From positions 124,001 to 188,000 of IMG/VR virus record IMGVR_UViG_3300028394_002328: a DNA stretch of 64,000 nt; one strand, written 5' to 3'. This document shows positions 5,422-26,981 of this stretch, one piece after another. Position 1 is the stretch's first letter. Each line of letters starts with the position of its first letter. The notes below the pieces were generated by a model that saw only the letters and a list, made by a program, of their open reading frames with translations, did not search any database and was not told the DNA's origin. A program made the position numbers and the translations under genes.

Positions 5422-5859
5422 ATGGGGAAATGGGCACAAGGGTTTTATACTCCTAAAAATCCTCAAAAATATATAGGAAAACATACTCCTAAATATCGTT
5501 CAGGATGGGAACTCACATTTATGACATTTTGTGACAGTAACAATAATGTACTGTACTGGGCTAGTGAAGCATTAAGAATTCCATATAAACACCCATTCAC
5601 AGGTAAACCAACTATCTATGTTCCTGATTTTTTTGTAGTCTATGAAAATAAGTTCGGCAAGAAAATAGCAGAAGTTGTAGAAATTAAACCTAAAAAACAA
5701 AGTATTATAGAAAGTAAAGCAGCCAGTGCAAAAGATAGAATGGTTGTTGCTATAAATCATGCTAAGTGGCAAGCGGCTATGGGATATTGTAAAAGTCAAG
5801 GATATACATTTAGAGTAATTACTGAATCCGATTTATTTAGAAATGGTAACCAAACCTGA
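5422..5859 (+). CDS. gp4: Head completion nuclease (T4 gp4-like, TnsA-N/PD-(D/E)xK fold)
   Basis: QGFYTPKNPQKYIG, YRSGWELTFMTFCD, WASE, YVPDF, EIKP, KWQAA, FRVITESDL. Confidence 0.9.
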   Translation: MGKWAQGFYTPKNPQKYIGKHTPKYRSGWELTFMTFCDSNNNVLYWASEALRIPYKHPFTGKPTIYVPDFFVVYENKFGKKIAEVVEIKPKKQSIIESKAASAKDRMVVAINHAKWQAAMGYCKSQGYTFRVITESDLFRNGNQT

Positions 5860-5860
5860 C

Positions 5861-5866
5861 TAAATA
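5861..5866 (+). promoter_or_regulatory. Late promoter core, 5 nt before ATG
   Basis: TAAATA-ATATT-ATG(5872), no SD. Confidence 0.6.
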
Positions 5867-5871
5867 ATATT

Positions 5872-6354
5872 ATGACCAAACGTTTAGAAGAATTATTTGA
5901 ACTGCCACAAGAAGAGATTGAATCTCTGTCTAAACCTATTCCTGAAAATGCAATAGAAGTTACTAAAGAAGCGTTAACTAATTTAGAAAAAATAGAAAAT
6001 GCTTTACCTCAAGTAAGAGGATTAGAAGTTGCTGATATTGAAATGGACAGTCTAGCTGATTTAGCTACTAATAGTTATAAAGACCTTATGGACTTAGGTA
6101 TGCAAGTAGATAGCAGATTTAGCAGTGAAATATTTAGCGTAGCTAGTAACATGTTAAATCATGCCATTACTGCTAAGACAGCTAAAATTAATAAGAAACT
6201 TAAAATGATAGAATTACAATTAAAGAAAGCTGCATTAGACCACAAAACCAATCCTGCCGTAGAAGAAATAGCAAATACTCCATTAGGTGAAGGTAAGGCT
6301 CTTGATAGAAATGAGTTGTTAAAAATTCTAGCAGCTAAAAAGAATGATGAATGA
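5872..6354 (+). CDS. Helical protein, possible small terminase subunit (gp16-like)
   Basis: Two-helix pattern SYKDLMDLG..SRFSSEIFSVASNMLNHAITAK..KMIELQLKK resembles gp16-type helices; position next to gp4. Assignment is tentative. Confidence 0.45.
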   Translation: MTKRLEELFELPQEEIESLSKPIPENAIEVTKEALTNLEKIENALPQVRGLEVADIEMDSLADLATNSYKDLMDLGMQVDSRFSSEIFSVASNMLNHAITAKTAKINKKLKMIELQLKKAALDHKTNPAVEEIANTPLGEGKALDRNELLKILAAKKNDE

Positions 6355-6365
6355 TAAATACTAGA
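6353..6365 (+). promoter_or_regulatory. Late promoter, extended GATAAATACTAGA copy 1
   Basis: Exact 13-mer also at 9484 and 27092. Confidence 0.7.
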
Positions 6366-6379
6366 TACGGGAACATGCA

Positions 6380-7006
6380 ATGAAAAGCCTTAAAAAATAT
6401 ATTACTGAAAGTGTGCATACATATAACTGCACGATTAAAATTGCAGGTGATGTTGATAAAAACTTCTTAGATTTATTCAAGTACAATCTAAGTAAGTTTG
6501 ATCCTATCGATATCAGTGCTCCTACAACCACGCCTATTCAAAAAGATCCATATGGTTTTCCTAATTTAAGCAATCAATCTGTAACTATTATCAAATGTAA
6601 ATTTAGATATCCAGCTACAGAACCAATGGTTCAACAAATAGCACAGTTGTGTGGATATAATGTTGATATGGTTCGTTTAGTTAATACTGATTATAACGAC
6701 AGTATTAATACAGAATCAGATGAGTATGCTAACCAAATGAAAGAAAGCCCATTATTGACTAAAAACGAAATGGGTTCAGCACCAGGCAGTAAAGAGGCTA
6801 GCAAAGCATATGGCGAGTCATATTTGACAAGCATTAAAGATCAAATGAAGGATAATGAAATTGATATTCCTTATTCAGGACAAAAAACTCAACCAGCATT
6901 TGATCCATTCAAAGTTATACCTCAAGATCCTAGGGGCGACAATAGCCCAATGAGTAAGATTACTAGACCAAATAAACCAGCGACTGGCGCTAAGTTCAAT
7001 AGATAA
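6380..7006 (+). CDS. Putative internal head protein with T4-like capsid-targeting N-terminus
   Basis: N-terminus MKSLKKYITE aligns with T4 CTS MKTYQEFIAE; late promoter upstream. Confidence 0.6.
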   Translation: MKSLKKYITESVHTYNCTIKIAGDVDKNFLDLFKYNLSKFDPIDISAPTTTPIQKDPYGFPNLSNQSVTIIKCKFRYPATEPMVQQIAQLCGYNVDMVRLVNTDYNDSINTESDEYANQMKESPLLTKNEMGSAPGSKEASKAYGESYLTSIKDQMKDNEIDIPYSGQKTQPAFDPFKVIPQDPRGDNSPMSKITRPNKPATGAKFNR

Positions 7007-7017: not shown

Positions 7018-9414
7018 ATGGACATGAAAGATTTATTATCAAAAATGGCTCAGCTTAATGAGGCTAAAGAAGCAAGCTATTCACCATCATACCGTGTAGG
7101 TAAGACTGGTGATTTTAGTGATAAGCCTAATATGAAAAGAGGCACACCAGTTGCTGGTAAAATAGGTAAGTATGGAAAAACATCAGATGAGTTAGGTGAT
7201 CCTGATCAAGATCCTGATGATGATACCTCTTCTAGCGCAGAGAAGCGTGGTCGTGGTCGTCCCAAGAAAGCAGGTGGAGAAGCATATACTAAAGATAGAT
7301 ACTCTGGTGCAAAAGACCTACAAAGTGTTATGATTGGTAAAATGCCTAAATCATTACCAGGTAAAAAAGGTACAGTACATAAATCTCCTCAAGATAAAGA
7401 AGAAGGCGCTACTAAAAAGAAAAGTTTAAAAGATTGGGTTGAAAGAGTAGAAAGCGTATTAGCAGAAAATACTGCTACCACAACATCAACTGCTACTGCA
7501 CCTAGTCCTTCACAGAAAGTAATGGTAAAGCCAGGCCAGCCTGCTGGACAAAAGCCTCCTGCAACAATGACTACACAAACAGGTCAAACTATTGCTGTAG
7601 GTTCAGCAGACCAAGTTAAAAAATTAGGTGATTTAGTTAACACAGGGCAAGTACAATTAACAAAGCCTGGTACAACTCAGCCACTAGATGAAGAAGATAT
7701 GGAAGAAGGTAATGAAAAGTGGATCAAAGGCGCTATCAAGCATCCAGGTGCTTTCACTAAAAAAGCAAAATCACATGGAATGAGTACATCTTCATTTGCT
7801 AGTAAAGTATTATCTAATAAAGAAGATTATCCTGCTAGTACTGAAAAGCAAGCAAATCTTGCAAAAACTTTAGGTAAGTTCCGTAAAAAAACTGACGAGG
7901 CTGATATTCCTCCAAATGACAGTTTAATGAGTCCTATTAGCGAAGCAAAGAAAAAAGCCGATGCAGCAGCAAAGAAAGATGATAAGGCTGAAAAAGCAGG
8001 CAAGAAAGTAGCTAAAGATATTGAGTATGATGAAAAAGTAAAAGATAGCATACATGGTAAAAAGCGCAGTGCTGAGGATAATAAAGCAGAACGTGCGGGT
8101 AAAAAAGTTGCTAAGGACATTGAATACGATATGAAAAAGAAAACAGTTAAAGAAGCCGCTAAGCCAGATTTCCCTGATATTGACAATGACGGCAATACAA
8201 AAGAATCTATGAAAAAGGCTGCAGCCGACAAGAAAAAGAAGGCTGTTAAAGAAGGTAGAGACCATCACTTAAAAGCAGCCTATCATGAAGGTAAGGCACA
8301 TGGTTTAAGCAAACAAGCATATAACTGTCGCCATGATGATATGGAAGAAGCAAGACAGTATCATGAAGGTTACAAGTGTGGTCTTGATGAGTGCTATGGT
8401 CAACAACCTATTTTAGGTTATGTCGGTGAAGAATCACAACATGATGTAGTTGACACAATGGCTAGTTACGGTGCTCATGGATTAGAAGAAGATGATATGA
8501 TGGAAGTTGGTCGTGGTGAATACATGAAGCAACAAGCCCGTAAGCCAGGCGATACATTCAAAGCGTTTGGTCAAACTTTCAAAGATAGCGATGTACTAGA
8601 TGAATTTGCTTTTGAATCATGGGATAAGCAATTAACTGCTATCTTAGAAGGTAAAGAAGTAAATGAAGGTATGACTGTTTCTATCTCTAAAGGTCATCAA
8701 GGTTCCCCTGATTCAGTAAGCGTATCAGCACAAGATGGCGAAGCCGACCAGTTGTTAGGCTTAATCAAATCAGCAGGCTTAGGTTTGTTTGGTGGAGATG
8801 AAAGCAAAGGGTTCGCACCCGGTGAAGAAACTCCTAGAACAGCACCAGGTGGTATTGAAGTAGTTGATGATCATGATGGTATGATGGCATTAATGAAAAA
8901 ATTAACTGGCGGTGACACGTCAGGTAGTGATGGAGATTACGAAGAAGAACAAGGTCATACCGATCACGACCATGGAGATCATGAAGAAGAGTGTAATGAG
9001 TGTGGTTACATGGAAAGCGATTGCCAGTGTGATGACAAAGAAATGGTTGATGAAGTAGAATCAGAAGACCAAATGACTTACAATGTAGCAGAAGATAATC
9101 CTCCTGATTCAGGCGCAGCAGAAACAACTGCTGATGAAAATGCTGAAGCAGCGGAAGATCAGGCAATTGCAACAGACGATGAATTTCAAAATGTCAATGA
9201 ATGGGCTAATCAAGTTGGTGGAGGTCCAGGCAAAGGGACAGATGCAGGATTTGAGCAAGATATTGCGTTTATGACTAAAGTTATTTCAGGTGGCTTGAAT
9301 AAGCAAAAATCAACTGGTCAGACAACTATCCCAGTGATTGCTCATCAGGGGCAGCGTACTGGTGTTAATGAAAATTTTGTGGCTGATTGGAAGAAATTAG
9401 CAGGAATAAAGTAA
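7018..9414 (+). CDS. Large charged low-complexity protein, putative prohead core/internal protein
   Basis: 798 aa, Lys/Glu/Asp-rich, many [LIVM]-x-E motifs, AT-hook KRGRGRPKK, DxDxDG motif, His/Cys cluster, ends DWKKLAGIK. Confidence 0.65.
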   Translation: MDMKDLLSKMAQLNEAKEASYSPSYRVGKTGDFSDKPNMKRGTPVAGKIGKYGKTSDELGDPDQDPDDDTSSSAEKRGRGRPKKAGGEAYTKDRYSGAKDLQSVMIGKMPKSLPGKKGTVHKSPQDKEEGATKKKSLKDWVERVESVLAENTATTTSTATAPSPSQKVMVKPGQPAGQKPPATMTTQTGQTIAVGSADQVKKLGDLVNTGQVQLTKPGTTQPLDEEDMEEGNEKWIKGAIKHPGAFTKKAKSHGMSTSSFASKVLSNKEDYPASTEKQANLAKTLGKFRKKTDEADIPPNDSLMSPISEAKKKADAAAKKDDKAEKAGKKVAKDIEYDEKVKDSIHGKKRSAEDNKAERAGKKVAKDIEYDMKKKTVKEAAKPDFPDIDNDGNTKESMKKAAADKKKKAVKEGRDHHLKAAYHEGKAHGLSKQAYNCRHDDMEEARQYHEGYKCGLDECYGQQPILGYVGEESQHDVVDTMASYGAHGLEEDDMMEVGRGEYMKQQARKPGDTFKAFGQTFKDSDVLDEFAFESWDKQLTAILEGKEVNEGMTVSISKGHQGSPDSVSVSAQDGEADQLLGLIKSAGLGLFGGDESKGFAPGEETPRTAPGGIEVVDDHDGMMALMKKLTGGDTSGSDGDYEEEQGHTDHDHGDHEEECNECGYMESDCQCDDKEMVDEVESEDQMTYNVAEDNPPDSGAAETTADENAEAAEDQAIATDDEFQNVNEWANQVGGGPGKGTDAGFEQDIAFMTKVISGGLNKQKSTGQTTIPVIAHQGQRTGVNENFVADWKKLAGIK

Positions 9415-9428
9415 AAGCAACTGATAAG

Positions 9429-9457
9429 AAATACCCAGCTTAGCTGGGTATTTTTTT
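9429..9457 (+). terminator. Rho-independent terminator
   Basis: AAATACCCAGC-TTA-GCTGGGTATTT followed by a T-run. Confidence 0.9.
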
Positions 9458-9483
9458 GGCTATGGCGTTCTTTATCTCAAAAC

Positions 9484-9496
9484 GATAAATACTAGA
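9484..9496 (+). promoter_or_regulatory. Late promoter, extended GATAAATACTAGA copy 2
   Basis: Between the terminator and the ATG at 9516. Confidence 0.75.
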
Positions 9497-9515
9497 ATAA
9501 AGAGGTAATGATAGG

Positions 9516-12500
9516 ATGAGCCAGCAGAATATAGACTTTGGTACGTTTCCTGACGATCCGGATGCGGATGCGATAAGAACGGCCTTTCAAAAAGTACAAG
9601 AAAACTTTACAGAAATTTATTCAGGCCTACAAGGCGCAGCGGTTTCATCAATCAATAGGACTCCTGGAGCTGGTATAACAGTAAGTAGTCCAACTGGTAA
9701 TGTTATCGTTACTGCTAACATTGCCTGCGTTCAAGTTCACACAAGCACACTAAGCATAGGTCGTGATGCTAATGGTAGTCAAGATACCTCTATTACTTCT
9801 AGCTCTCAGACTCTATGGGTTGACCTACCTACTACTATTTCTAACGTTACTAATATTATATTATCTGGTAATGCTTCAATAGGTGGAAATTTATTAGTAA
9901 ATGGTTTTTCTAATTTAGCTAATATTATAGCCACTGGATATGCTAACATAGGTAGTAATCTTACGGTCACTGGAAATATATCTTCAAATGCAATCTCTGC
10001 AACGGGTAATATTAGCACAACTGCTAATCTTAGTGGAGCAAACATTAGCAGTACAGGGACATTGACAGTATCCGGTAACGTTAATTTTACTGGCACAAGT
10101 AATGTTACATTAGGTAGTACATCTAACATACACATGTCTGGTGGAACTAGCGGATATATATTACAGACTGATGGTTCAGGAAATTTATCTTGGATTAATC
10201 CAAGTTCAGCAGTTGGGTCGGGAACATCAGGTACAAGTGGATATACAGGTATAAGTGGTTATAGTGGTATCAGCGGGTACACAGGAGTTTCAGGATATAC
10301 CGGTGTTAGTGGTGTTTCAGGTACATCGGGATATTCAGGTGTTTCAGGTACAAGCGGATACAGTGGATATACTGGTTATTCAGGTGCAGTAGGAACATCA
10401 GGAACTAGTGGATACACCGGAACATCAGGTACAAGTGGATATACCGGTGTTTCAGGATATACTGGAACGTCAGGCTTTACAGGAATCAGTGGATACTCAG
10501 GCACTTCAGGATATACTGGAACATCGGGTACATCGGGTACATCAGGTACTAGTGGATACTCAGGTACAAGTGGTACATCAGGTACATCAGGTACGAGTGG
10601 ATACACCGGTACATCAGGTACATCAGGTACGAGTGGATATACCGGTACATCAGGATATTCAGGTACTAGCGGTATTAGTGGTTACACGGGGGCAAGCGGT
10701 ACATCAGGCATCAGTGGATATACAGGTACTTCAGGAACTTCGGGATACTCAGGAACTTCGGGCTATTCAGGAACAAGTGGTATAAGTGGACATTCAGGCA
10801 TCAGTGGTTACACGGGGGCAAGCGGTACATCAGGCATCAGTGGATATACAGGTACTTCAGGATATACTGGAACGTCAGGCTATACAGGTGTCAGTGGATA
10901 CTCAGGCACAAGTGGTATATCAGGTTATACAGGAGATAGTGGTACATCGGGGATATCTGGTTATACTGGCACATCAGGTACTTCAGGGATATCTGGTTAT
11001 ACTGGTGCAATCGGTACATCAGGGTATACTGGTATCAGTGGTTACACCGGGGTCAGTGGTTATACTGGGGTCAGTGGTTACACAGGAACATCAGGTATAT
11101 CAGGTTATACAGGAGCTAGTGGTACATCGGGGATATCTGGTTATACTGGCACATCAGGTACTTCAGGGATATCTGGTTATACTGGTGCAAGCGGTACATC
11201 TGGGCATTCTGGGGTCAGTGGTTATACCGGCGTAAGTGGTTATACTGGGGTCAGTGGTTACACAGGAACATCAGGTATATCAGGTTATACAGGAGCTAGT
11301 GGTACATCGGGGATATCAGGATATACTGGTGCATCTGGACATTCTGGTATATCAGGTTATACCGGTGCTAGTGGCACATCGGGTATATCAGGGTATACTG
11401 GTATCAGTGGTTACACCGGGGTCAGTGGTTATACTGGGGTCAGTGGTTATACTGGAACATCAGGTATATCAGGTTATACAGGAGCTAGTGGTACATCGGG
11501 TACTAGTGGATATTCTGGTATTAGTGGTTATTCAGGGACAAGCGGTACATCAGGTGCAAGTGGTATTTCGGGTTATACTGGAACATCAGGTATATCAGGA
11601 TACACCGGAGCAAGTGGTACATCGGGAATATCAGGATATACTGGAACAAGTGGTACATCGGGATATTCAGGAACTTCTGGATATTCAGGAACTTCCGGGG
11701 CAAGTGGCACATCAGGGATTAGTGGTTATACAGGAGCTAGTGGTACATCGGGTATCAGTGGTTATACTGGTGTTTCAGGTTATACTGGTGTTTCAGGCTA
11801 CACAGGAACTTCCGGGGCAAGTGGCACATCAGGGATTAGTGGTTATACTGGAACAAGTGGTACATCAGGGATTAGTGGTTATACTGGAACAAGTGGTACA
11901 TCGGGTATCAGTGGTTATACTGGAACAAGTGGTACATCAGGGATTAGTGGATATACTGGTGTCAGTGGATACACCGGTACAAGCGGAACATCTGGTATAA
12001 GTGGTTATTCAGGTTCAGGCATCAGCGGCTACTCAGGTACAAGTGGCACATCAGGTACAAGCGGTACGACAGGAATTAGTGGATATACCGGTGTCAGCGG
12101 ATATACTGGAGTAAGTGGCACATCTGGTATAAGTGGTTATACGGGAGATAGTGGTACATCAGGTATCAGTGGCTACTCAGGAACAAGTGGTACATCAGGT
12201 ATCAGTGGATATACCGGTACTAGTGGTACATCAGGTATCAGTGGCTACTCAGGAACAAGTGGTACATCAGGTATTAGTGGATACACCGGTATTAGTGGAT
12301 ACACCGGTATTAGTGGTACATCAGGTGTCAGTGGTTATACTGGCGTAAGTGGATACACAGGCGTAAGTGGATACACAGGCGTAAGTGGATATTCAGGATC
12401 AGGCGTAAGTGGCTACTCAGGTACATCAGGTATCAGTGGTACATCAGGTAGAAGCGGATACTCAGGTCAATCAGTCGCTATTCAAGGTTCAGTTGCGAAC

Positions 12501-15500
12501 TCTACTTTATTACCATCTGGTCAACCTGCAGGATATTTATATATCGTTCTAGCTGCTGGTGGTGGATATAATGCAGGTGATGGTGCATTAAGTAATGGCG
12601 ATAACACATATACCAATATTGGACCACTTCAAGGTCCATCAGGATTCTCAGGTGTAAGTGGTTATTCAGGATCAGGTATAAGTGGTTATACTGGTACAAG
12701 CGGATATACTGGTACATCAGGAACAAGTGGTTACACTGGAACAAGTGGTACATCAGGTATCAGTGGATATTCAGGTAGTAGCGGGTATTATGGTCAAGAC
12801 GGAACAAGTGGATATTCAGGAACAAGTGGCTACTCAGGTACTTCAGGAGTAAGTGGGTATACTGGTACATCAGGTACAAGCGGATATACTGGTGCTAGTG
12901 GTACCTCAGGTACAAGCGGATATACTGGTACAAGCGGATATACTGGTACAAGCGGATATACTGGTACATCAGGAACAAGTGGTTATACAGGCACTTCAGG
13001 AATAAGTGGAACATCAGGAATAAGCGGTACATCAGGCATAAGCGGGTACACTGGTACAAGTGGTACATCAGGTATCAGTGGTACATCAGGTATCAGTGGA
13101 TACTCAGGATCAGGTATTAGTGGTTATTCGGGTACAAGTGGTTACACAGGTACTTCAGGCATAAGTGGTTACACAGGTACTTCAGGCATAAGCGGCACAT
13201 CAGGCATAAGTGGATATACTGGAACAAGCGGCTACTCAGGTACTTCAGGCATAAGTGGAACATCAGGCATAAGTGGAACATCAGGCATAAGTGGTTATAC
13301 TGGTGTTAGTGGTTATTCAGGTACATCAGGAATAAGTGGTTATACAGGTGTAAGTGGAGAATCTGGTATAAGCGGATATAGTGGTACTTCAGGTATAAGC
13401 GGTACATCGGGTATCAGTGGATATACAGGAGTAAGTGGATATTCAGGTGCATCGGGCGCATCAGGTACTAGCGGATACACTGGTACAAGTGGTACAAGTG
13501 GTACAAGTGGATATACAGGAGTAAGTGGATACAGTGGTACATCAGGTTTAAGCGGTTATAGTAGTTCTAGCGGTGTTAGTGGATACAGCGGTGCCTCAGG
13601 TACTAGTGGTAAACAAGGTACATCAAGTAGTTACTTCAATTATCTTGCTGATACTAGTACACAAAGTGCGCCTCCTGCAACTGGGGATATTATTTGGAAC
13701 AATAGTACACAAACTAGTGCTACTCAGATATATGTAAACCATGTTACTTCAGATGGAGTAGATATTGAGATATTCTTAGCATTACTAAGTCAAACAGAAT
13801 TAATTACTTTACAAGATGCTGCCGAAAGTAATAATTATCAAATATTTGAAATCAATGGTACTCCTACAAATAATACAACTTATTGGACACTTCCAGTAGT
13901 ATCAACAGGTTCGGGAGGAACAGGTTCTACTAATTTTGGTAATAATTTACCTCTAATCTTAGCATTAACTAATGGTGTTAGTGGATTCTCGGGAGCATCA
14001 GGTAGCAGTGGTTATTCAGGAACTTCAGGGTATACTGGTGTAAGTGGATACACAGGTGTCAGTGGATATACTGGTACATCGGGTATAAGTGGATACACAG
14101 GGGTAAGTGGTTATACTGGTGTTAGTGGCTACTCAGGTACATCAGGTATAAGCGGTACATCAGGTATAAGCGGTACATCAGGTATAAGCGGTACATCAGG
14201 TATAAGTGGTGCATCAGGTATAAGTGGCTATACTGGAACAAGTGGATATACTGGTACATCAGGTATTAGTGGTTACACTGGAACATCAGGTATAAGCGGA
14301 ACATCAGGTATAAGTGGATACACTGGAACAAGTGGATACTCAGGCACATCAGGTACTAGTGGCACATCGGGTATAAGCGGTACTTCAGGAATAAGCGGCT
14401 ACTCAGGATCAGGTATTAGTGGATATACTGGTACATCAGGTATAAGTGGATACACTGGTGTTAGTGGATATACAGGTGTAAGTGGATACTCAGGTACATC
14501 AGGAATAAGTGGTTACACTGGTACAAGTGGCACATCAGGTATCAGTGGTACATCAGGTATCAGTGGTACATCAGGTATCAGTGGATACTCAGGATCAGGT
14601 ATAAGCGGATATACTGGTACATCAGGGATAAGTGGTTACACTGGTGTTAGTGGTTACACTGGTGTTAGTGGATATACAGGGGTAAGTGGATACACTGGTG
14701 TTTCAGGTGTAAGTGGTTACACTGGTACAAGTGGTACATCTGGTATCAGTGGATACACCGGCACATCAGGGAGAAGTGGATACTCAGGTACTTCAGGCAT
14801 AAGTGGATACACAGGTATATCAGGATATACAGGCGTAAGTGGTACATCAGGTATCAGTGGATATACTGGGGTCAGTGGGTACACCGGAATAAGTGGATAC
14901 ACAGGTGTCAGTGGATACTCAGGTAATGCAGGTGTAAGCGGATACTCAGGATCAGGTGTAAGTGGATATTCTGGTACATCAGGATACAGCGGTGTTGCAG
15001 GTACGTCAACATCACTCAACGCAACAAATGATACAACAACTAACCCATTATACCCAGTAATGGTTGCCGCTGCAGGAAGCACTCAAACAGTAAAAGTAAG
15101 TACTAGTGGTCTAGCGTTTAATGCTAGTAGTAATGTTCTCACTGTTGGTAGCGGTACAGGTGGTAATATTACTGGTTCTAACGTAATAAGTGCTAACACC
15201 TTTATCGGTACCCTTGCTAATGGTAATAGTAACGTTTATATTGCTACAGCAAACGGTAACGTGACAATAGCAGCGGTTGGTAATACTACATTGACAATTA
15301 CTGGTACTGGTGCAAATATCAGCGGTACAGCAAATATTTCAGGTAATGCTAACGTTGGTAATATTGGAACTGCTCAAGTACTTGCTTCAGCAAACGTTAC
15401 TTCACCTCAACTAATATCAAACATAGCAACCGGTACTGCGCCGTTAGTAGTAACAAGTACAACTCGTGTTTCTAATCTTAGTGTTGCTTATGCTAACGTT

Positions 15501-17378
15501 TCGGACTATAGTACTATTACTACAGCATCTACAGGTAACTATTATGTTAACTTTACTAATGCATTAACAGGTAACGTACAAATGAACGCTAACGCTGCGT
15601 TCGTTGCAAACACAAGTAATGGTGCATTATACGCAACTACATTTGTTGGTAATCTATATGGTATTTTAGCCAACGGTAATAGTAATGTCAACATTGCAAC
15701 TGCAAACGGCAATGTCACAATAGCGGCTGTTGGTAATACTACATTGACAATTACTGGTACTGGAGCAAATATTAGTGGTACAGCAAATATTTCAGGTAAT
15801 GCTAACACTGGTAACTTAGGTACAACAACATTAATTGCTACAACAGGTAATATTACTACAGTTAATGGTAACATAGCAAACGCTTCTACTATCATTGCTA
15901 ATGCAGCAAACGGAACTGTATTTGCAAATAACTATACAGCATCAGGTGCTGCTACAGGTAATGCCAATGTATCAACTATAACAGGTAATTTGGGTATTCG
16001 TGCAATATTCTCTACCTATACAGATAATTCAGCAGCAGCCAGTGCTACTATCGCTAATGCAGCAATACACGCAATAGCAGCACCAAACTTAGCAGCAGCA
16101 AATGCTACTGTTACATTTACTAACGCAGCAACGTTTTATATTGCAGGTGCGCCAGTTGCTAATACAAATGCTACAATTACTAATCCATATTCATTATTTG
16201 TAGCAGCAGGTAATAGTTATCTTGCAGGTAACGTTACTTTTGCAGGTAACTTAATCGGTATTCATGCAAATGGTAATAGTAACGTCAATATACCTGCCGC
16301 TAATGGAAACGTTAATATAAGTGCAGCAGGTAATGCTAATGTGTTCGTTGTAACCGGCACTGGTGCTAATATCACCGGTACAGCAAATATTTCAGGTAAT
16401 GCTAACGTAGGTAGCTTAGGCTTTGGTAGTGGTGTAATTACTGGTACCGGCAACATTACTGGTGGTAACTTAATTGGTATTATCGCTGCTGGGTCAAATA
16501 CAATTACTACTACTGGTAATATTACTGGTGGTAACTTGATTGGTATTCACGCAAACGGTAATAGTAATGTTAATATACCTGCTGCTAACGGAAACGTTAA
16601 TATAAGTGCGGTTGGTAATGCTAATGTGCTAGTTGTAACTGGAACTGGTGCAAACATCACTGGTACTGCTAACATCACTGGTAATACTAACGTTGGTAAT
16701 ATTACAGTAGGCTCTGGAACCGGTGGTAATATTACTGGAGCAAACTTAGTAAGTGCTAATTATTTTACTGGTACATTTATTAATGGTAACAGCAACATAT
16801 CTATTGTAGCAAATGCCAATATTAATTTATCAGCAGTTGGTAATGCTAATGTGTTCGTTGTAACCGGCACTGGTGCTAATATCACCGGTACAGCAAATAT
16901 TTCAGGTAATGCGAACGTCGGTAACTTAGGCTTTGGTAGTGGGGTAATTACTGGTACAGGTAATATAACTGGCGGTAATTTAATTGGTATCGTGGCTGCT
17001 GGTAGTAATACTATTAGTACTACTGGTAATATATCAGCAGGTAATGTAACAGTAACATCATATCACATACGTTCAGTTGGTACTGCAATATCAGCAGCAG
17101 GTTCTACTCAAGGTACTGCTACAGCATTGACTAAAGAGATGAACATTGTTTCTACTGTTCTATCTGGCAATGGTGTAGTATTACCAACAGCAGTAGCTGG
17201 TATGGTATTAACTATTACTAATAGTAGTGCAAACAGTTTATTAGTATACCCTGCAACTGGGGCAGCAATTAATGCACTAGCAGCCAATGCAGGATTGACG
17301 CAAGTTGCGAACGCAACAATACAATTTATTGCACCAACTACAACTCAGTGGTATACAGTAGGCGCTACATACGCATAA
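9516..17378 (+). CDS. Giant fibre protein: gp9/gp10-like N-terminal anchor, Gly-X-Ser/Thr repeat, Asn/Gly-rich shaft
   Basis: N-terminus QNIDFGTFPDDPDADAIRTAFQKVQENFTEIY matches the T4 gp9/gp10 N-terminal pattern (IxxG...DG.GD.LR.AF.K.N.NF.E.Y); three Gly-X-Y blocks; C-terminal GNI/NGNSNV fibre repeats. Confidence 0.85.
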   Translation: MSQQNIDFGTFPDDPDADAIRTAFQKVQENFTEIYSGLQGAAVSSINRTPGAGITVSSPTGNVIVTANIACVQVHTSTLSIGRDANGSQDTSITSSSQTLWVDLPTTISNVTNIILSGNASIGGNLLVNGFSNLANIIATGYANIGSNLTVTGNISSNAISATGNISTTANLSGANISSTGTLTVSGNVNFTGTSNVTLGSTSNIHMSGGTSGYILQTDGSGNLSWINPSSAVGSGTSGTSGYTGISGYSGISGYTGVSGYTGVSGVSGTSGYSGVSGTSGYSGYTGYSGAVGTSGTSGYTGTSGTSGYTGVSGYTGTSGFTGISGYSGTSGYTGTSGTSGTSGTSGYSGTSGTSGTSGTSGYTGTSGTSGTSGYTGTSGYSGTSGISGYTGASGTSGISGYTGTSGTSGYSGTSGYSGTSGISGHSGISGYTGASGTSGISGYTGTSGYTGTSGYTGVSGYSGTSGISGYTGDSGTSGISGYTGTSGTSGISGYTGAIGTSGYTGISGYTGVSGYTGVSGYTGTSGISGYTGASGTSGISGYTGTSGTSGISGYTGASGTSGHSGVSGYTGVSGYTGVSGYTGTSGISGYTGASGTSGISGYTGASGHSGISGYTGASGTSGISGYTGISGYTGVSGYTGVSGYTGTSGISGYTGASGTSGTSGYSGISGYSGTSGTSGASGISGYTGTSGISGYTGASGTSGISGYTGTSGTSGYSGTSGYSGTSGASGTSGISGYTGASGTSGISGYTGVSGYTGVSGYTGTSGASGTSGISGYTGTSGTSGISGYTGTSGTSGISGYTGTSGTSGISGYTGVSGYTGTSGTSGISGYSGSGISGYSGTSGTSGTSGTTGISGYTGVSGYTGVSGTSGISGYTGDSGTSGISGYSGTSGTSGISGYTGTSGTSGISGYSGTSGTSGISGYTGISGYTGISGTSGVSGYTGVSGYTGVSGYTGVSGYSGSGVSGYSGTSGISGTSGRSGYSGQSVAIQGSVANSTLLPSGQPAGYLYIVLAAGGGYNAGDGALSNGDNTYTNIGPLQGPSGFSGVSGYSGSGISGYTGTSGYTGTSGTSGYTGTSGTSGISGYSGSSGYYGQDGTSGYSGTSGYSGTSGVSGYTGTSGTSGYTGASGTSGTSGYTGTSGYTGTSGYTGTSGTSGYTGTSGISGTSGISGTSGISGYTGTSGTSGISGTSGISGYSGSGISGYSGTSGYTGTSGISGYTGTSGISGTSGISGYTGTSGYSGTSGISGTSGISGTSGISGYTGVSGYSGTSGISGYTGVSGESGISGYSGTSGISGTSGISGYTGVSGYSGASGASGTSGYTGTSGTSGTSGYTGVSGYSGTSGLSGYSSSSGVSGYSGASGTSGKQGTSSSYFNYLADTSTQSAPPATGDIIWNNSTQTSATQIYVNHVTSDGVDIEIFLALLSQTELITLQDAAESNNYQIFEINGTPTNNTTYWTLPVVSTGSGGTGSTNFGNNLPLILALTNGVSGFSGASGSSGYSGTSGYTGVSGYTGVSGYTGTSGISGYTGVSGYTGVSGYSGTSGISGTSGISGTSGISGTSGISGASGISGYTGTSGYTGTSGISGYTGTSGISGTSGISGYTGTSGYSGTSGTSGTSGISGTSGISGYSGSGISGYTGTSGISGYTGVSGYTGVSGYSGTSGISGYTGTSGTSGISGTSGISGTSGISGYSGSGISGYTGTSGISGYTGVSGYTGVSGYTGVSGYTGVSGVSGYTGTSGTSGISGYTGTSGRSGYSGTSGISGYTGISGYTGVSGTSGISGYTGVSGYTGISGYTGVSGYSGNAGVSGYSGSGVSGYSGTSGYSGVAGTSTSLNATNDTTTNPLYPVMVAAAGSTQTVKVSTSGLAFNASSNVLTVGSGTGGNITGSNVISANTFIGTLANGNSNVYIATANGNVTIAAVGNTTLTITGTGANISGTANISGNANVGNIGTAQVLASANVTSPQLISNIATGTAPLVVTSTTRVSNLSVAYANVSDYSTITTASTGNYYVNFTNALTGNVQMNANAAFVANTSNGALYATTFVGNLYGILANGNSNVNIATANGNVTIAAVGNTTLTITGTGANISGTANISGNANTGNLGTTTLIATTGNITTVNGNIANASTIIANAANGTVFANNYTASGAATGNANVSTITGNLGIRAIFSTYTDNSAAASATIANAAIHAIAAPNLAAANATVTFTNAATFYIAGAPVANTNATITNPYSLFVAAGNSYLAGNVTFAGNLIGIHANGNSNVNIPAANGNVNISAAGNANVFVVTGTGANITGTANISGNANVGSLGFGSGVITGTGNITGGNLIGIIAAGSNTITTTGNITGGNLIGIHANGNSNVNIPAANGNVNISAVGNANVLVVTGTGANITGTANITGNTNVGNITVGSGTGGNITGANLVSANYFTGTFINGNSNISIVANANINLSAVGNANVFVVTGTGANITGTANISGNANVGNLGFGSGVITGTGNITGGNLIGIVAAGSNTISTTGNISAGNVTVTSYHIRSVGTAISAAGSTQGTATALTKEMNIVSTVLSGNGVVLPTAVAGMVLTITNSSANSLLVYPATGAAINALAANAGLTQVANATIQFIAPTTTQWYTVGATYA
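10221..15008 (+). repeat. 9-bp-period Gly-X-(Ser/Thr) coding repeat in three blocks (10221-12473, 12633-13625, 13974-15008)
   Basis: Triplets GTS, GYT, GYS, GIS, GVS, GAS; about 751+331+345 aa by coordinate count. Confidence 0.95.
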
Positions 17379-17387
17379 GGAAATATT

Positions 17388-18008
17388 ATGATAACATTAG
17401 ATATATTAAGAGCAATTTGTCCAAAAACAAAACCTGCAATTTTAGAAAATTACGTTGAACCGATTAACACAGTGGGTCAATATTATGAAATGTTTGACAA
17501 CCCAAAAAGAATAGCAGGGTTTTTAGCACAAGTAGCACACGAATCAGGTGGGTTTACTGCTATAAAAGAAAATTTAAATTATAGTGCTAAAGGGTTGATG
17601 ACTACTTTCAAAAAATACTTCCCCGATGAAGCTACTGCAAAGCAATACGAGAAGAAACCAGAAAAGATTGCTAATCGTGTATATGCTAACAGAATGAAAA
17701 ATGGTTCTGAAGAATCAGGTGATGGATATCGTTTTTGTGGGCGTGGATTAATACAGTTAACAGGAAGAGATAATTATACTAAGTTTGCACAGGCACTGGA
17801 CATGAGTATTGATGATACAGTAGCCTATTTAGAAACTCCAAACGGCGCATTAGTTAGTGCAGCATGGTTTTGGGATAATAATAAATTAAATCAATATTGC
17901 GACCGTGATGATTTTGTTACATTGACTAAAAGAATTAATGGCGGAACTATTGGATTGGAAGATAGAAAGCATCATTATCAAATTGCATTGAATTTGCTTC
18001 AAGGGTAA
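17388..18008 (+). CDS. Glycoside hydrolase family 19 (chitinase/lysozyme-like) lysin
   Basis: AGFLAQVAHESGGF, ENLNYS, GDGYRFCGRGLIQLTGRDNY, SAAWFW, TKRINGG.GLEDR. Confidence 0.93.
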   Translation: MITLDILRAICPKTKPAILENYVEPINTVGQYYEMFDNPKRIAGFLAQVAHESGGFTAIKENLNYSAKGLMTTFKKYFPDEATAKQYEKKPEKIANRVYANRMKNGSEESGDGYRFCGRGLIQLTGRDNYTKFAQALDMSIDDTVAYLETPNGALVSAAWFWDNNKLNQYCDRDDFVTLTKRINGGTIGLEDRKHHYQIALNLLQG

Positions 18009-18009
18009 A

Positions 18010-20529: not shown

Positions 20530-20532
20530 ATA
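20527..20532 (+). promoter_or_regulatory. Late promoter core overlapping stop codon
   Basis: TAAATA built on the TAA stop at 20527-20529. Confidence 0.55.
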
Positions 20533-20549
20533 CTATATGGAAATGAATT

Positions 20550-21824
20550 ATGAGTAGCGCAATTAATACAAACGGAATAGATGTTAATTATCCTACACCC
20601 GGGCAGAATAATAGTAGCCAAGGGTTTAGGAATAATTTCAATGCTATAAAAACTAATATTGATACCGCCGGTACGGAGATCACTGATTTACAAAACAAAG
20701 TTGTTGTCAAGTCCGCATTAAATAATACCACTGTAGACAATAACATGGCTAATACTTTGATTAGCAATGCCAGTACGAGAAGTTTTAGAGCAACTACTTT
20801 TAATTTGGGCAATAGCTTATCCGGCACAGTATTAGTTGATGTTTCATTAGGTGACGTACAATATGGTACTGTTACGGCTAATACTACCTTTCAATTTGGT
20901 AACTGGGCTCCTACTGGCACTCAGAGTAATGTTCAATTACAATTGGCAATTAGTAATGCAAATGCGGTAATCACTTGGCCTAGCGAAGTAGTAGTATCAA
21001 ATAACAATTTTGGTTTAACTAGTTTAGAAAATTATATTATTGGTACTTCAAATATTACTACCCCTTATAATGTATCTCAACTAGATTACAGATTAAGTAG
21101 TTTAGATTGCGGTAATACTATTACAATTGAACCATATAATAGACCAAGACAATCTACACAAATTCAACAAAGAAGTCCAGCACCAACTGGATTTCAAGGT
21201 GATGTAGCAGGAACAGTAGCAGTTGATCCTAGCGTTAATCAATTAACAATCACCGTTGCTAATACAGACCCATATCTTACAACTTCAGGCAATACTACAC
21301 AACTATATACTGATTTACCAATAGTATTTACCGGTACTTCACTTGCAGGTAATATCGTAGTAGGAACAACATATTATGTAAGAAATGTAGTGTCTAGTAC
21401 TACATTTACTGTGTCATCATCTATCGGTGGGGCTAATATTGCAATTGGGGCAAATGCTTCAGGCACTACAATGTTTGCTAATCCTGCAAGATACTTGTAT
21501 GTATCTACTGATGATTATAATTCTACAGTTTATAATAAAAATGTTGCAAACACTACAGTGACAACCAATGTGATAACATTAAACAATACCACTAGTCTAG
21601 TAGTTAATGCTCCAATCATTTTTACAGCAAATATTGCAGAAATAGTTGCAAATACAGTCTATTATATTAAAACTATATCTAGCCCGAATATAACTATTAG
21701 TCAATCTAGGACAAATGGTGTAGCAGGTACAACATTAACATTAAGTTCTAATGCTACTGCTACAACTGCTAACATATATGTAGGGTCTGATATTTGGCGA
21801 AGAATTCCTCTTAATTCATGGTAA
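20550..21824 (+). CDS. Virion structural protein
   Basis: N-terminal YP.PGQNNSSQGFRNNF.AIK coiled-coil anchor; two copies of the PIVFT..T.YY...TFT.S module; ends IWRRIPLNSW. Confidence 0.7.
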   Translation: MSSAINTNGIDVNYPTPGQNNSSQGFRNNFNAIKTNIDTAGTEITDLQNKVVVKSALNNTTVDNNMANTLISNASTRSFRATTFNLGNSLSGTVLVDVSLGDVQYGTVTANTTFQFGNWAPTGTQSNVQLQLAISNANAVITWPSEVVVSNNNFGLTSLENYIIGTSNITTPYNVSQLDYRLSSLDCGNTITIEPYNRPRQSTQIQQRSPAPTGFQGDVAGTVAVDPSVNQLTITVANTDPYLTTSGNTTQLYTDLPIVFTGTSLAGNIVVGTTYYVRNVVSSTTFTVSSSIGGANIAIGANASGTTMFANPARYLYVSTDDYNSTVYNKNVANTTVTTNVITLNNTTSLVVNAPIIFTANIAEIVANTVYYIKTISSPNITISQSRTNGVAGTTLTLSSNATATTANIYVGSDIWRRIPLNSW

Positions 21825-21828
21825 TTAA

Positions 21829-22065
21829 ATGCATCCATTCATAACTGATTTATCTGATAAAAAACTAGAAGACTTACAAACTACGATATCTGATCTCACT
21901 GGAAAATTAAATTTTGCTTATAGGACTGGAAATGGTCCATTAATTCATCAATTACAAATGGCAATCGGTAGTTATAAAGATGAATACCAAAAGAAAATGG
22001 ATGATCTCATAAAAAAACAAAATATTAGTTCAAAGATTGATATAAAGAAACAAAATGAGCGCTAG
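21829..22065 (+). CDS. Small hypothetical coiled-coil protein
   Basis: In-operon ORF overlapping the next start. Confidence 0.7.
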   Translation: MHPFITDLSDKKLEDLQTTISDLTGKLNFAYRTGNGPLIHQLQMAIGSYKDEYQKKMDDLIKKQNISSKIDIKKQNER

Positions 22066-22654: not shown

Positions 22655-22657
22655 CTC

Positions 22658-22686
22658 TTGATATTTACCTTAAGAGGTGTTACAAT
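22658..22686 (+). promoter_or_regulatory. Sigma70-type promoter for the dnaE fragment
   Basis: TTGATA-N17-TACAAT with extended TG; ATG 5 nt downstream at 22692. Confidence 0.7.
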
Positions 22687-22691
22687 CAGTT

Positions 22692-23198: not shown

Positions 23199-23201
23199 AT
23201 A
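23196..23201 (+). promoter_or_regulatory. Late promoter core overlapping stop codon
   Basis: TAAATA on the TAA stop, followed by SD AGGAG. Confidence 0.55.
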
Positions 23202-23222
23202 TTCTATATAAGGAGTTTCATT

Positions 23223-24267: not shown

Positions 24268-24269
24268 TT

Positions 24270-26133: not shown

Positions 26134-26158
26134 AAACGGGGCCTAGGCCCCGTTTTTT
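26132..26158. terminator. Bidirectional rho-independent terminator
   Basis: AAAAACGGGGC-CTAG-GCCCCGTTTTT between convergent genes; A-run and T-run on either side. Confidence 0.92.
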
Positions 26159-26936: not shown

Positions 26937-26981
26937 CTTGATCTCCTTTGTTAGAGCTAAGAATGTAATCACATTCAAAAG

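What the first reader, a model, noticed from the sequence alone, without database searches (positions are those of the whole stretch)
7018..9414. Polyprotein-like internal head protein: DNA- and metal-binding micro-modules separated by protease-type sites
Seen: more than a dozen [LIVM]-x-E motifs (LNE-A, LAE-N, LDE-E, ISE-A, VKE-A, VKE-G, LEE-D, LDE-F, VNE-G, VDE-V, VAE-D, VNE-W, VNE-N) divide the protein into short segments with distinct character: an AT-hook KRGRGRPKK (7243-7269), a basic helical WIKGAIKHPGA..ANLAKTL unit, a duplicated KAEKAGKKVAKDIEYD unit, a Ca-binding-like DIDNDG (about 8176-8193) and a His/Cys cluster HTDHDHGDH..CNECG..CQC (about 8956-9030). Established: T4 gp21 cleaves after (I/L)-x-E, and AT-hooks bind AT-rich minor grooves. 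Inference: one gene delivering a set of peptides that condense DNA or are ejected into the host.
Basis: partly seen in the sequence, partly recalled or inferred. Interest (0 to 1): 0.65.

Follow-up and report, generated by a model that had tools for sequence, protein, structure and literature searches.

The report
Protease-cut internal head protein, jumbo phage
This gene of an uncultured giant phage encodes a mostly disordered, mosaic protein that carries the scaffold protein's tail and about a dozen conserved protease-type cut sites, so it is most likely built into the young phage head and chopped into small DNA-binding and acidic pieces; this is a new variant of a known theme and has not been shown experimentally.

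Summary
ORF 7018-9414 (+) encodes 798 aa with 19 [LIVM]-x-E motifs (10.5 expected). It also has an AT-hook, a duplicated 16-aa unit, a DxDxDG loop and a His/Cys cluster, all at the stated coordinates.

Composition alone gives modest enrichment (z 2.8, rank 10 of 290 ORFs). The stronger evidence is conservation. In 121 homologues, 12 of 21 conserved Glu keep a hydrophobic residue at P3 and almost never at P2, P4 or P5.

A 335-kb contig carrying an identical copy encodes a T4-type prohead protease (Peptidase_S77), a scaffold protein and a gp23-type capsid protein. The protein ends in the same motif as the scaffold (K/R-K/R-L-A/S-G-I/L). These are the only two such ORFs among 356.

The AlphaFold model shows small folded islands on a disordered chain. 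The N-terminal half is basic and the C-terminal half is acidic. In the cultured relative PA5oct, the gene at the same position (gp281) is a virion protein by mass spectrometry.

Best reading (confidence about 0.55): a prohead-core or internal head protein that is processed into pieces. Virion location, cleavage and the fate of the peptides are untested. Novelty: a new variant of a known kind.

The parts
7018..9414 (+). ORF of 798 aa (P0001), a mosaic and mostly disordered protein. Residues 16-412 are basic (net +20), 413-728 acidic (net -55), and 729-798 form a basic tail.
7018..7062 (+). N-terminal 15-aa amphipathic leader ending L-N-E|A. Candidate targeting or pro-peptide.
   Evidence: L13 and E15 kept in 118/120 homologues, with A or G at P1'. 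Predicted helix 3-11. A similar leader is present on the acidic core protein next to the protease.
7243..7269 (+). AT-hook-like basic stretch with a G-R-P core.
   Evidence: Best Pfam hit is PF02178 at 14.2 bits, below the 17.4 cut-off. The G-[RK]-G-R-P core is kept in 95/121 homologues.
7459..7467 (+). Conserved site L-A-E150|N (mostly L-N-E|A in relatives).
   Evidence: Motif in 117/117. P3 varies among L, I, M and V. Lies just after helix 138-148.
7717..7890 (+). Small helical module, aa 234-291 (phrog_20603). In some relatives it is replaced by a different helical module.
   Evidence: E 2.6e-16. pLDDT 75-92. Found as 59-aa stand-alone proteins in Thermus phages. 41% identical over 66 aa to an internal stretch of the cargo-protein-1 homologue of crAss-like phage cr128_1. 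Present in 60/121 homologues.
7891..7899 (+). Site T-D-E294|A at the end of the helical module.
   Evidence: E294 is invariant, with a hydrophobic P3 in 108/121 relatives (Thr in this protein) and A at P1'.
7984..8031 (+). Copy 1 of the 16-aa Lys-rich repeat (aa 323-338).
   Evidence: Copy number is 0-4 across the family.
8083..8130 (+). Copy 2 of the 16-aa repeat (aa 356-371).
8176..8193 (+). DxDxDG loop, identified at motif level only. Swapped for a Cys-containing module in 27 relatives.
   Evidence: present in 47/121. No Pfam support.
8209..8400 (+). Conserved His/Cys-rich helical hairpin, aa 398-461. It contains the sites V-K-E412|G, M-E-E444|A and L-D-E458|C.
   Evidence: pLDDT 81-95. Motifs kept in 120/121, 117/121 and 121/121 homologues. 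No significant fold match.
8422..8430 (+). Site V-G-E471 in a disordered linker.
   Evidence: 102/102. pLDDT below 50.
8497..8505 (+). Site M-M-E496|V (mostly L-D-E|M or L-D-E|V in relatives). The linker just upstream is a hot spot for inserted modules.
   Evidence: 112/115. Inserts seen.
8659..8667 (+). Site V-N-E550|G between two small folded elements.
   Evidence: 120/120, with G invariant at P1'. pLDDT below 50 at 546-550.
8956..9030 (+). His-rich stretch followed by a CxxC...CxC cluster. Candidate zinc knuckle.
   Evidence: The CxxC...[CH]xC pattern is kept in 119/121 homologues. Metal binding was not tested.
9046..9054 (+). Site V-D-E679|V.
   Evidence: 119/120. Disordered.
9085..9093 (+). 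Site V-A-E692|D.
   Evidence: 119/120. Disordered.
9193..9201 (+). Site V-N-E728|W, at the border of the conserved C-terminal tail.
   Evidence: 109/120
9202..9411 (+). Conserved basic C-terminal tail, aa 729-798.
9388..9411 (+). C-terminal motif W-K-K-L-A-G-I-K, the same motif that ends the scaffold protein.
   Evidence: All 121 homologues end [WY]-x-x-L-[AS]-G-[IL] plus 0-2 residues. All 120 scaffold homologues end K-R-L-A-G-L. The PA5oct scaffold ends R-R-L-A-G-I-K. Expected number of such C-termini in the genome is 0.0023; two were observed.
5422..7006 (+). Context: a gp4-type head-completion gene (5422-5859) and two small genes (5872-6354, 6380-7006) that are homologous to PA5oct gp283 and gp282.
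   Evidence: The gene order is kept in 17 related loci.

Best explanation
The gene encodes a prohead-core (internal head) protein of an uncultured jumbo myovirus whose head is built the T4 way.

Proposed mechanism:
1. The precursor is taken into the assembling prohead. Recruitment is through its C-terminal tail, which copies the last residues of the scaffold protein, and possibly also through its 15-residue N-terminal leader.
2. The phage's Peptidase_S77 prohead protease then cuts after Glu at about a dozen conserved hydrophobic-x-Glu sites. Most of these lie in disordered linkers between small modules.
3. Cutting separates three basic pieces of 13-15 kDa from an acidic C-terminal half (residues 413-728). 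The basic pieces are residues 16-150 with the AT-hook, 151-294 with the small helical module, and 295-412 with the Lys-rich repeats.
4. The basic pieces would stay with the packaged AT-rich DNA and perhaps enter the host with it. The acidic pieces would leave, as scaffold fragments do.

Shown here: the motifs, their conservation, the disorder, the charge split, the shared C-terminal motif, the presence of the protease in a near-identical genome, and the virion location of the positional counterpart in PA5oct.

Inferred: incorporation into the head, every cleavage, and the fate and function of the pieces.
For: - Clade: the sheath is 43-44% identical to those of Atu_ph07 and PA5oct.
- Head genes: the 335-kb contig with a 100% identical copy encodes Peptidase_S77 (98 bits), gp23-type MCP (324 bits), portal and scaffold.
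- Protease specificity: MCP relatives keep hydrophobic-x-E about 25 residues before the conserved mature N-terminal region. The scaffolds of this phage and of PA5oct have 28 and 27 such motifs, 16 at shared columns, with L, I, V and M interchanging at P3.
- Conserved sites: 12-13 sites are conserved with strict P3 specificity.
- Structure: 503/798 residues have pLDDT below 50, and 9 of the 12 conserved sites fall in linkers or at module ends.
- Mosaicism: modules are swapped and inserted, and insert borders lie closer to the sites than random positions (within 6 aa in 52% against 28%).
- Shared tail: the C-terminal motif is shared only with the scaffold among 356 ORFs and is conserved in both families. 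The strict motif in PA5oct falls in the scaffold and in two MS-detected virion proteins, gp278 and gp249.
- Positional counterpart: PA5oct gp281 is a virion protein by MS, acidic, with 12 such sites and three looser copies of the motif. The flanking genes are homologous.
- Charge split.
- Divergence: this is the fastest-evolving protein of its gene block (37-51% against 45-84% identity for the other genes of the block). T4 internal proteins are likewise highly diverse (PMC3012670).
Against: - There is no direct evidence of virion location or of cleavage. The phage is uncultured.
- Motif enrichment by composition is only moderate (rank 10 of 290). [LI]xE alone is not significant.
- The fraction of conserved Glu with a hydrophobic P3 is not significantly above that of neighbouring proteins in the matched sample (P=0.23).
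- Half of the sites have Val at P3 and unusual P1' residues (C, V, M, W, D). Acceptance by this protease is inferred only from the scaffold comparison.
- Three sites lie inside a confident helical hairpin.
- The gene sits in the tail-tube/head-completion block, about 190 kb from the head genes.
- There is no sequence homology to PA5oct gp281 or to any characterised internal protein.
- The complex prediction of the tail with the MCP gave no answer.
Confidence: 0.55

Rival explanations
1. It is an accessory scaffold or core protein. It enters the prohead as proposed but is degraded completely and expelled, so no functional peptides remain. The basic and acidic halves only help core assembly.
For: It has a scaffold-type C-terminal motif, a high density of protease-type sites and an acidic C-terminal half. 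T4 gp22, gp67 and gp68 are degraded to small peptides (PMC9958956).
Against: - The AT-hook is conserved in 95/121 homologues and the Cys cluster in 119/121, which suggests the pieces have functions of their own.
- The protein diverges and shuffles modules far faster than the scaffold (40-60% against 77-96% identity among the top hits).
- In PA5oct the positional analogue gp281 is detected in virions, whereas the scaffold gp330 is not.
- The three basic pieces contain few conserved internal sites.
Confidence: 0.2
2. It is an unprocessed virion protein. Either it is a neck, head-completion or tail-lumen component, or it is an extended cargo protein threaded through the portal like crAss C1. The conserved hydrophobic-x-Glu pattern would then be incidental.
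For: The gene lies between head-completion and tail-fibre genes in a strictly conserved block. One module is shared with a crAss cargo-protein-1 homologue. The long disordered chain would suit extrusion. Composition-only enrichment is moderate.
Against: The conserved hydrophobic residue falls at P3 and almost never at P2, P4 or P5, unlike in ten neighbouring structural proteins. The sites lie in linkers. The tail matches the scaffold's. A separate 1499-aa tape-measure-like protein lies next to the portal.
Confidence: 0.17
3. It is a non-structural DNA-binding protein, for example a nucleoid or genome-organising factor made late in infection, and is never packaged.
For: It has an AT-hook and Lys-rich repeats. 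The small helical module occurs as stand-alone genes in the non-structural regions of Thermus phages.
Against: It is tightly packed in a structural operon, with an 11-nt spacer and conserved order. It has the scaffold-type C-terminus. Its positional analogue in PA5oct is a virion protein.
Confidence: 0.05

Closest known systems
T4 prohead core proteins: internal proteins IPI-III and Alt, and gp67/gp68 (PMC9958956, PMC3012670)
   Same: They are encoded by a phage with an S77 prohead protease and built into the scaffolding core. They are cut after Glu in hydrophobic-x-Glu motifs. They carry a short N-terminal leader that is removed. The retained proteins are basic, contact DNA and are highly diverse between phages.
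   Different: There is no sequence homology. T4 internal proteins lose only a 10-20-residue leader, whereas here about a dozen conserved sites are spread over 798 residues. Targeting is suggested to use a C-terminal copy of the scaffold tail rather than, or in addition to, an N-terminal CTS. This protein also has an AT-hook, a Cys cluster and cassette-like modules.
Ejection and inner-body proteins of phiKZ-like giant phages, e.g. SPN3US gp53/gp54 (PMC10052503, PMC5694885)
   Same: They are large internal head proteins of jumbo phages whose long pro-regions are cut at several x-E sites by a gp21-related protease. They are fast-evolving and paralogous or mosaic.
   Different: They belong to a different phage lineage and a different motif (A/S/G-x-E). 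That motif shows no excess here: 18 seen against 18.2 expected. Their pro-regions are N-terminal with a single large mature product. There is no homology.
Pseudomonas phage PA5oct gp281 (YP_010678933.1), a 498-aa 'structural protein' detected by ESI-MS/MS
   Same: It occupies the same position after homologous genes: sheath, two tube genes, head closure, gp283 and gp282. It is acidic, has 12 hydrophobic-x-E motifs, and has three looser copies of the L-A-G motif.
   Different: There is no detectable homology. It is shorter, has no AT-hook or Cys cluster, and its motif copies are N-terminal and internal rather than C-terminal.
Scaffold protein of the PA5oct/Rak2/Atu_ph07 clade (phrog_10922; PA5oct gp330)
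   Same: It has an identical type of C-terminal motif and a very high density of hydrophobic-x-E sites.
   Different: The scaffold is a 369-aa helical protein that is highly conserved and encoded between the protease and the MCP. P0001 is unrelated in sequence apart from the tail, is mostly disordered, and is encoded about 190 kb away.
Cargo protein C1 (gp45) of PhicrAss001 and its homologue in cr128_1 (PMC10172136)
   Same: It shares a roughly 60-residue helical module (41% identity). It is a protein of similar size that is largely unresolved in the virion map, is stored inside the virion and is thought to be ejected.
   Different: It comes from a podovirus with no known S77-type processing of C1. 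Only the one module is shared, and no other part of the cr128_1 homologue, which carries the portal-binding compact domain, aligns with P0001.
Adenovirus core proteins pVII and pre-Mu, and the herpesvirus UL26/UL26.5 and lambda C/Nu3 arrangement (from general knowledge, not tested here)
   Same: The principles match. Basic DNA-condensing peptides are released inside the capsid by the viral protease. Passengers are recruited by sharing the scaffold's C-terminal capsid-binding tail.
   Different: These are unrelated viruses and proteins. The comparison is an analogy only.

Membership tests
Substrates of a T4-type (Peptidase_S77) prohead protease / prohead core proteins | The phage encodes an S77 prohead protease. 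| tested here: met
   PF03420 at 98 bits, above the cut-off, in the 335-kb contig that carries a 100% identical copy of the gene. The 88-kb record holding the window lacks the head region.
Substrates of a T4-type (Peptidase_S77) prohead protease / prohead core proteins | Cleavage after Glu in hydrophobic-x-Glu motifs. | not testable with these tools
   Only indirect evidence: 12-13 conserved motifs with P3 specificity, mostly in linkers.
Substrates of a T4-type (Peptidase_S77) prohead protease / prohead core proteins | Presence in proheads or virions. | not testable with these tools
   The phage is uncultured. The positional analogue PA5oct gp281 is annotated as MS-detected.
Substrates of a T4-type (Peptidase_S77) prohead protease / prohead core proteins | A targeting signal shared with other core proteins. 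| tested here: inconclusive
   The C-terminal motif is shared only with the scaffold. An N-terminal leader ending in hydrophobic-x-E is also present, but 44/356 ORFs have such a motif at residues 12-18. Binding to the MCP gave no answer.
Scaffolding protein of this clade (phrog_10922) | Sequence homology over the helical body. | tested here: not met
   The PHROG scan of P0001 found only phrog_20603 and a weak phrog_30010 hit. The scaffold is a separate gene that matches phrog_10922.
AT-hook (PF02178) | G-R-P core flanked by Arg/Lys and a score above the family cut-off. | tested here: inconclusive
   The core and flanks are present and conserved in 95/121 homologues. The score is 14.2 bits against a cut-off of 17.4. 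DNA binding was not tested.
Tail tape measure protein | Long helical protein with Gly/Ala-rich hydrophobic segments; one per genome, in the tail module. | tested here: not met
   The protein is mostly disordered and charged. A 1499-aa tape-measure-like ORF with a lysozyme-like end lies next to the portal in the full genome.
crAss-like cargo protein C1 | Homology including the portal-binding compact domain. | tested here: not met
   BLASTP aligns only residues 244-309 to residues 243-307 of the cr128_1 protein.
phiKZ-type inner-body / ejection proteins | Homology, and S/A/G-x-E processing motifs. | tested here: not met
   No hits in phage records beyond the small module. [SAG]xE count is 18 against 18.2 expected.
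EF-hand / DxDxDG calcium-binding loops | A recognised calcium-binding domain around the loop. | tested here: not met
   No Pfam match for residues 295-412 even at E up to 5. The loop is present in only 47/121 homologues.

The most novel reading that the evidence does not exclude
The protein is a self-neutralising, cassette-built payload polyprotein. An acidic C-terminal half masks three basic DNA-binding pieces in the cytoplasm, and a scaffold-mimicking C-terminal tail smuggles the whole chain into the prohead. The prohead protease then frees the pieces. The basic ones act as phage-encoded histone-like or AT-hook condensers of the AT-rich genome, or are co-injected to act on host DNA. Because every cassette is bracketed by protease sites, modules can be swapped freely between phages, including with crAss-like cargo proteins. 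The L-A-G tail would then be a general, transferable head-targeting tag of this jumbo-phage clade.
Probability: 0.2. Interest if true: 0.75.

Novelty: new variant of a known kind. Interest (0 to 1): 0.52.

Why it matters
Internal head proteins are among the least understood parts of jumbo phages. According to the T4 review, how proteins are sorted into the scaffolding core "remains mysterious" (PMC9958956).

This family has more than 1,800 metagenomic members and no annotation. It offers a concrete, testable sorting signal: the scaffold-type C-terminal L-A-G motif. That motif is also present in virion proteins of the cultured phage PA5oct.

It also shows a clear case of a head protein built from exchangeable mini-modules bracketed by protease sites. 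If the tail works as a tag, it could be used to load foreign proteins into jumbo-phage capsids, as the T4 CTS is used. An AT-hook inside a phage capsid would be a new kind of DNA-packing or injected factor.

Tried and rejected
- **Complex prediction.** MCP (alignment A3) with the C-terminal 70 residues gave no answer, score 0.00. This is neither support nor evidence against binding.
- **Fold searches.**
  - BFVD gave only the Thermus-phage mini-proteins and weak cargo-protein rows.
  - PDB Foldseek found nothing at E<=0.001.
  - VIA wide search of the 384-600 model reached Z 6.8 at best (C5a, ribosome modulation factor). That is within the noise for helical hairpins.
- **Family and structure libraries.** Nothing significant beyond phrog_20603 from the PDB sequence profile search, Pfam, PHROGs or NCBIfam.
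- **Inserted modules.** Pfam on the longest family members found nothing. One N-terminal PTPS hit in P0112 is probably a fusion or miscall on a 2.6-kb contig.
- **ESM Atlas.** The small helical module matched only viral hypothetical clusters.
- **Homology to PA5oct gp281.** An HMM of the family scored nothing against gp281 and its neighbours, so gp281 is a positional analogue only.
- **Tape-measure idea.** Rejected, because a separate tape-measure-like gene lies next to the portal.
- **T4 late promoter.** TATAAATA is not enriched in the window: 4 seen, 11.8 expected.
- **Atu_ph07 synteny.** It breaks after the head-closure gene and was not informative.
- **Source names.** Cluster look-up gave only 'hypothetical protein'.
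- **Sequencing runs.** No read-level or expression data were obtained, and read laying was not used.
- **N-terminal leader.** On its own it is not specific: 44/356 ORFs have a hydrophobic-x-E at residues 12-18.
Full report
**1. What is there**

ORF 7018-9414 (+) is a clean 798-aa reading frame (P0001). It has a Shine-Dalgarno-like AAGGA 10 nt upstream and only 11 nt separating it from the preceding gene.
- 13 named hydrophobic-x-Glu motifs, plus six more, 19 in all;
- the AT-hook at 7243-7269;
- the DxDxDG loop at 8176-8193;
- the His/Cys cluster at 8956-9030;
- two copies of a 16-aa Lys-rich unit at 7984-8031 and 8083-8130.

**2. Genomic setting**

The window is a structural region of a myovirus. 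The genes run in this order:
- tail sheath;
- two tail-tube genes;
- a gp4-type (TnsA-like) head-completion gene;
- two small unknown genes;
- P0001;
- a 2620-aa collagen-like fibre;
- a GH19 lysozyme;
- further fibre and baseplate genes.

The sheath is 43-44% identical to those of the jumbo phages Atu_ph07 and PA5oct.

The window's own record is an 88-kb fragment estimated at 26% complete, and it has no head genes. A 335,035-bp IMG/VR contig (G001, 95% complete) carries a 100% identical copy of the gene.

About 190 kb from P0001, G001 has a T4-type head module in this order:
- a 1499-aa tape-measure-like protein;
- portal;
- a 75-aa protein;
- a 294-aa acidic protein;
- a Peptidase_S77 prohead protease (98 bits);
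- a 369-aa scaffold protein;
- a gp23-type major capsid protein (324 bits).

The same module, gene for gene, is present in PA5oct.

**3. Are the motifs more than chance?**

- Against shuffles of the protein itself: 19 observed, 10.5 expected (P=0.004). The narrow T4 consensus [LI]xE is not significant (8 against 4.8). The phiKZ-type [SAG]xE shows no excess.
- Against the whole genome: z=2.8 ranks 10th of 290 ORFs. Reassuringly, the scaffold protein ranks first (28 against 13 expected, z=5.0).
- Across 121 homologues the excess is systematic: 21.9 against 13.7, and 78% have z>2.
- The decisive point is conservation.
  - Of the 21 Glu columns kept in at least 80% of the family, 12 keep L, I, V or M two residues upstream. 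A 13th, E294, does so in 108/121 members.
  - The corresponding counts for one, three, four and five residues upstream are 1, 0, 1 and 0.
  - Hydrophobic-x-Asp, -Lys and -Gly give 3/19, 3/20 and 4/27.
- Ten neighbouring proteins from the same 17 related genomes spread their hydrophobic residues evenly over P2-P5 (13, 13, 7 and 11 of 47 conserved Glu). P0001 gives 1, 8, 0 and 1 (Fisher P=0.009).
- Caveat: the plain fraction of conserved Glu with a hydrophobic P3 is not significantly higher than in those neighbours in the matched sample (P=0.23).
- An amphipathic helix would also enrich P4 and P5, which is not seen.

**4. Does the phage's protease plausibly use such sites?**

- The capsid-protein relatives keep a hydrophobic-x-Glu about 25 residues before the conserved mature N-terminal block. 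This is where T4 gp23 is cut, according to general knowledge of T4.
- The scaffold proteins of G001 and PA5oct are only 37% identical. They carry 28 and 27 motifs, 16 of them at the same alignment columns, with L, I, V and M interchanging at P3.
- Val or Met at P3, which is common in P0001, is therefore plausible. It remains an inference.

**5. Architecture**

- AlphaFold with a 70-sequence alignment gives mean pLDDT 50, with 503/798 residues below 50.
- Small confident islands are a helical module at 234-294, a helical hairpin at 385-460 and a small beta-hairpin plus helix near 500-545.
  - Folding residues 384-600 separately confirmed only the hairpin.
- Nine of the twelve conserved sites lie in disordered linkers or at module ends (E15, E150, E294, E471, E496, E550, E679, E692, E728). 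Three (E412, E444, E458) lie inside the hairpin.
- Cutting at the conserved sites would give a 15-residue leader, three basic pieces of 13-15 kDa (16-150 with the AT-hook, 151-294, 295-412; net +7, +6, +7), a run of acidic pieces (413-728, net -55) and a basic 70-residue tail.

**6. Mosaicism**

The family has more than 1,800 members, all metagenomic and unannotated, from contigs of up to 350 kb. It keeps the sites while the material between them changes:
- The helical module is replaced by another helical module in at least 21 members.
- The Lys-rich repeat occurs in 0-4 copies.
- The DxDxDG loop alternates with a Cys-containing module.
- Large unrelated inserts appear in the linkers.
- Insert borders lie nearer to a motif than random positions do (within 6 residues in 52% against 28%; median 6 against 14). 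This count is approximate, because the sequences are related and alignment borders are imprecise.
- The AT-hook core is kept in 95/121 and the CxxC...[CH]xC cluster in 119/121 members.

P0001 is the most divergent protein of a gene block whose order is identical in 17 related loci (37-51% identity against 45-84% for the other genes of the block). It is also far less conserved than the scaffold.

**7. The C-terminal tail (new here)**

- P0001 ends W-K-K-L-A-G-I-K. The G001 scaffold ends I-K-R-L-A-G-L. The PA5oct scaffold ends R-R-L-A-G-I-K.
- Among the 356 ORFs of G001, the pattern [KR][KR]L[AS]G[ILVT] occurs only in these two proteins, both at the very end. About 0.23 occurrences are expected in the genome and 0.0023 at C-termini. 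The pattern was defined after seeing the two proteins, so this is not a formal P value.
- Independent support:
  - All 121 P0001 homologues and all 120 scaffold homologues keep it.
  - Two relatives carry an extra internal copy.
  - In PA5oct the strict pattern, read in frame, falls in the scaffold and in two MS-detected virion proteins, gp278 and gp249. A weaker variant (His in place of the second basic residue) falls in one protein without MS evidence, gp264.
  - The G001 homologue of gp278 ends in a close variant of the motif.
- Sharing the scaffold's C-terminal tail is how herpesvirus and lambda proteases are recruited into procapsids. That is general knowledge and was not tested here.

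**8. The cultured analogue**

In PA5oct the genes after the sheath run in this order:
- two tube genes;
- gp285;
- a head-closure gene (gp284);
- gp283;
- gp282;
- gp281;
- terminase.

gp283 and gp282 are homologous to the two small genes upstream of P0001 (E 2e-24 and 5e-8).

gp281 therefore sits at the position of P0001. It is annotated as a structural protein found by ESI-MS/MS. It is acidic, has 12 hydrophobic-x-Glu motifs, and carries three looser L-A-G motifs. It is not detectably homologous to P0001. The PA5oct scaffold was not detected by MS, as expected for a protein that is degraded.

**9. A link to cargo proteins**

The helical module at 244-309 is 41% identical to residues 243-307 of an 854-aa protein of crAss-like phage cr128_1. 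BFVD labels that protein as containing the cargo-protein-1 compact domain. [quoted passage not shown] The same module exists as 59-aa stand-alone proteins in Thermus phages. Only this one module is shared.

**10. Interpretation**

The most economical reading is that P0001 is a prohead-core or internal head protein. It would be recruited by the scaffold-type tail, and perhaps also by the 15-residue leader. That leader resembles the one on the acidic core protein next to the protease. The S77 protease would then cut it into pieces.

T4 provides the precedent. Its core proteins are either degraded (gp22, gp67, gp68) or trimmed and retained as basic, DNA-contacting, highly variable internal proteins (PMC9958956 and PMC3012670). 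phiKZ-like phages show multi-site cutting of long pro-regions (PMC10052503 and PMC5694885).

What happens to the pieces is inference. The conserved AT-hook and the basic N-terminal half argue that they stay with the AT-rich DNA (36-40% G+C) or are injected. The acidic half would leave. I put this explanation at about 0.55.

The rivals are:
- a fully degraded accessory scaffold, 0.20;
- an unprocessed virion or cargo protein, 0.17;
- a non-structural DNA-binding protein, 0.05.

**11. Limits**

- There are no proteomic, expression or read data.
- The complex prediction gave no answer.
- Fold and family searches were blank.
- Metal binding and calcium binding rest on motifs only.
- The head genes were read from a near-identical contig, not from the window's own fragment.

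Noticed in passing
window 9516-17378, 44066-46645, 52765-57792: Three very large fibre-like proteins with collagen-like Gly-x-x triplets. The 2620-aa one has an uninterrupted G-x-x run of 600 residues. These stretches explain the raised G+C and strong GC skew of the regions (0.42-0.48 against about 0.35).
   Followed up: partly
window 24944-25870: A DNA-polymerase clamp-loader gene (phrog_168, E 1e-69) sits inside the otherwise structural region.
   Followed up: no
G001 78716-80458 (outside the window): A 580-aa homologue of the PA5oct virion protein gp278. It is rich in hydrophobic-x-Glu motifs (22 against 12.2 expected, z 3.4) and ends in a close variant of the scaffold-type motif (K-R-L-L-G-K). 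It is another candidate protease-processed head protein.
   Followed up: partly
G001 246978-248555 and 256103-256795 (outside the window): Two further ORFs begin with a leader resembling that of P0001 (ending L-S-E) and end in strongly basic tails. The 230-aa one has an acidic middle and a z of 3.8 for the motif. They are possible additional packaged proteins.
   Followed up: no
PA5oct NC_071039 155221-155847 (gp249): An MS-detected 208-aa virion protein with an internal I-K-K-L-A-G-I-S motif. A V-D-E site and a very basic Lys/Pro-rich C-terminus follow it. This suggests the L-A-G motif marks several head proteins in the cultured relative.
   Followed up: partly
G001 8717-27751 (outside the window): A single ORF of 6344 aa in the near-identical 335-kb genome. 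It was not examined.
   Followed up: no
L081 14523-19022 (G001, next to the portal): A 1499-aa tape-measure-like protein with Gly/Ala-rich hydrophobic stretches and a lysozyme-like C-terminal part is encoded directly upstream of the portal gene, far from the sheath and tube genes.
   Followed up: no
window 5422-5859: The head-completion (T4 gp4-like) protein matches the TnsA-type endonuclease N-terminal domain (PF08722, E 3e-20).
   Followed up: no
P0004 (1201 aa, 350-kb contig), residues about 491-801: A close relative (92% identical over the shared parts) carries about 300 extra residues in the linker between sites E471 and E496. Very recent module gain or loss therefore occurs at that hot spot.
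   Followed up: partly
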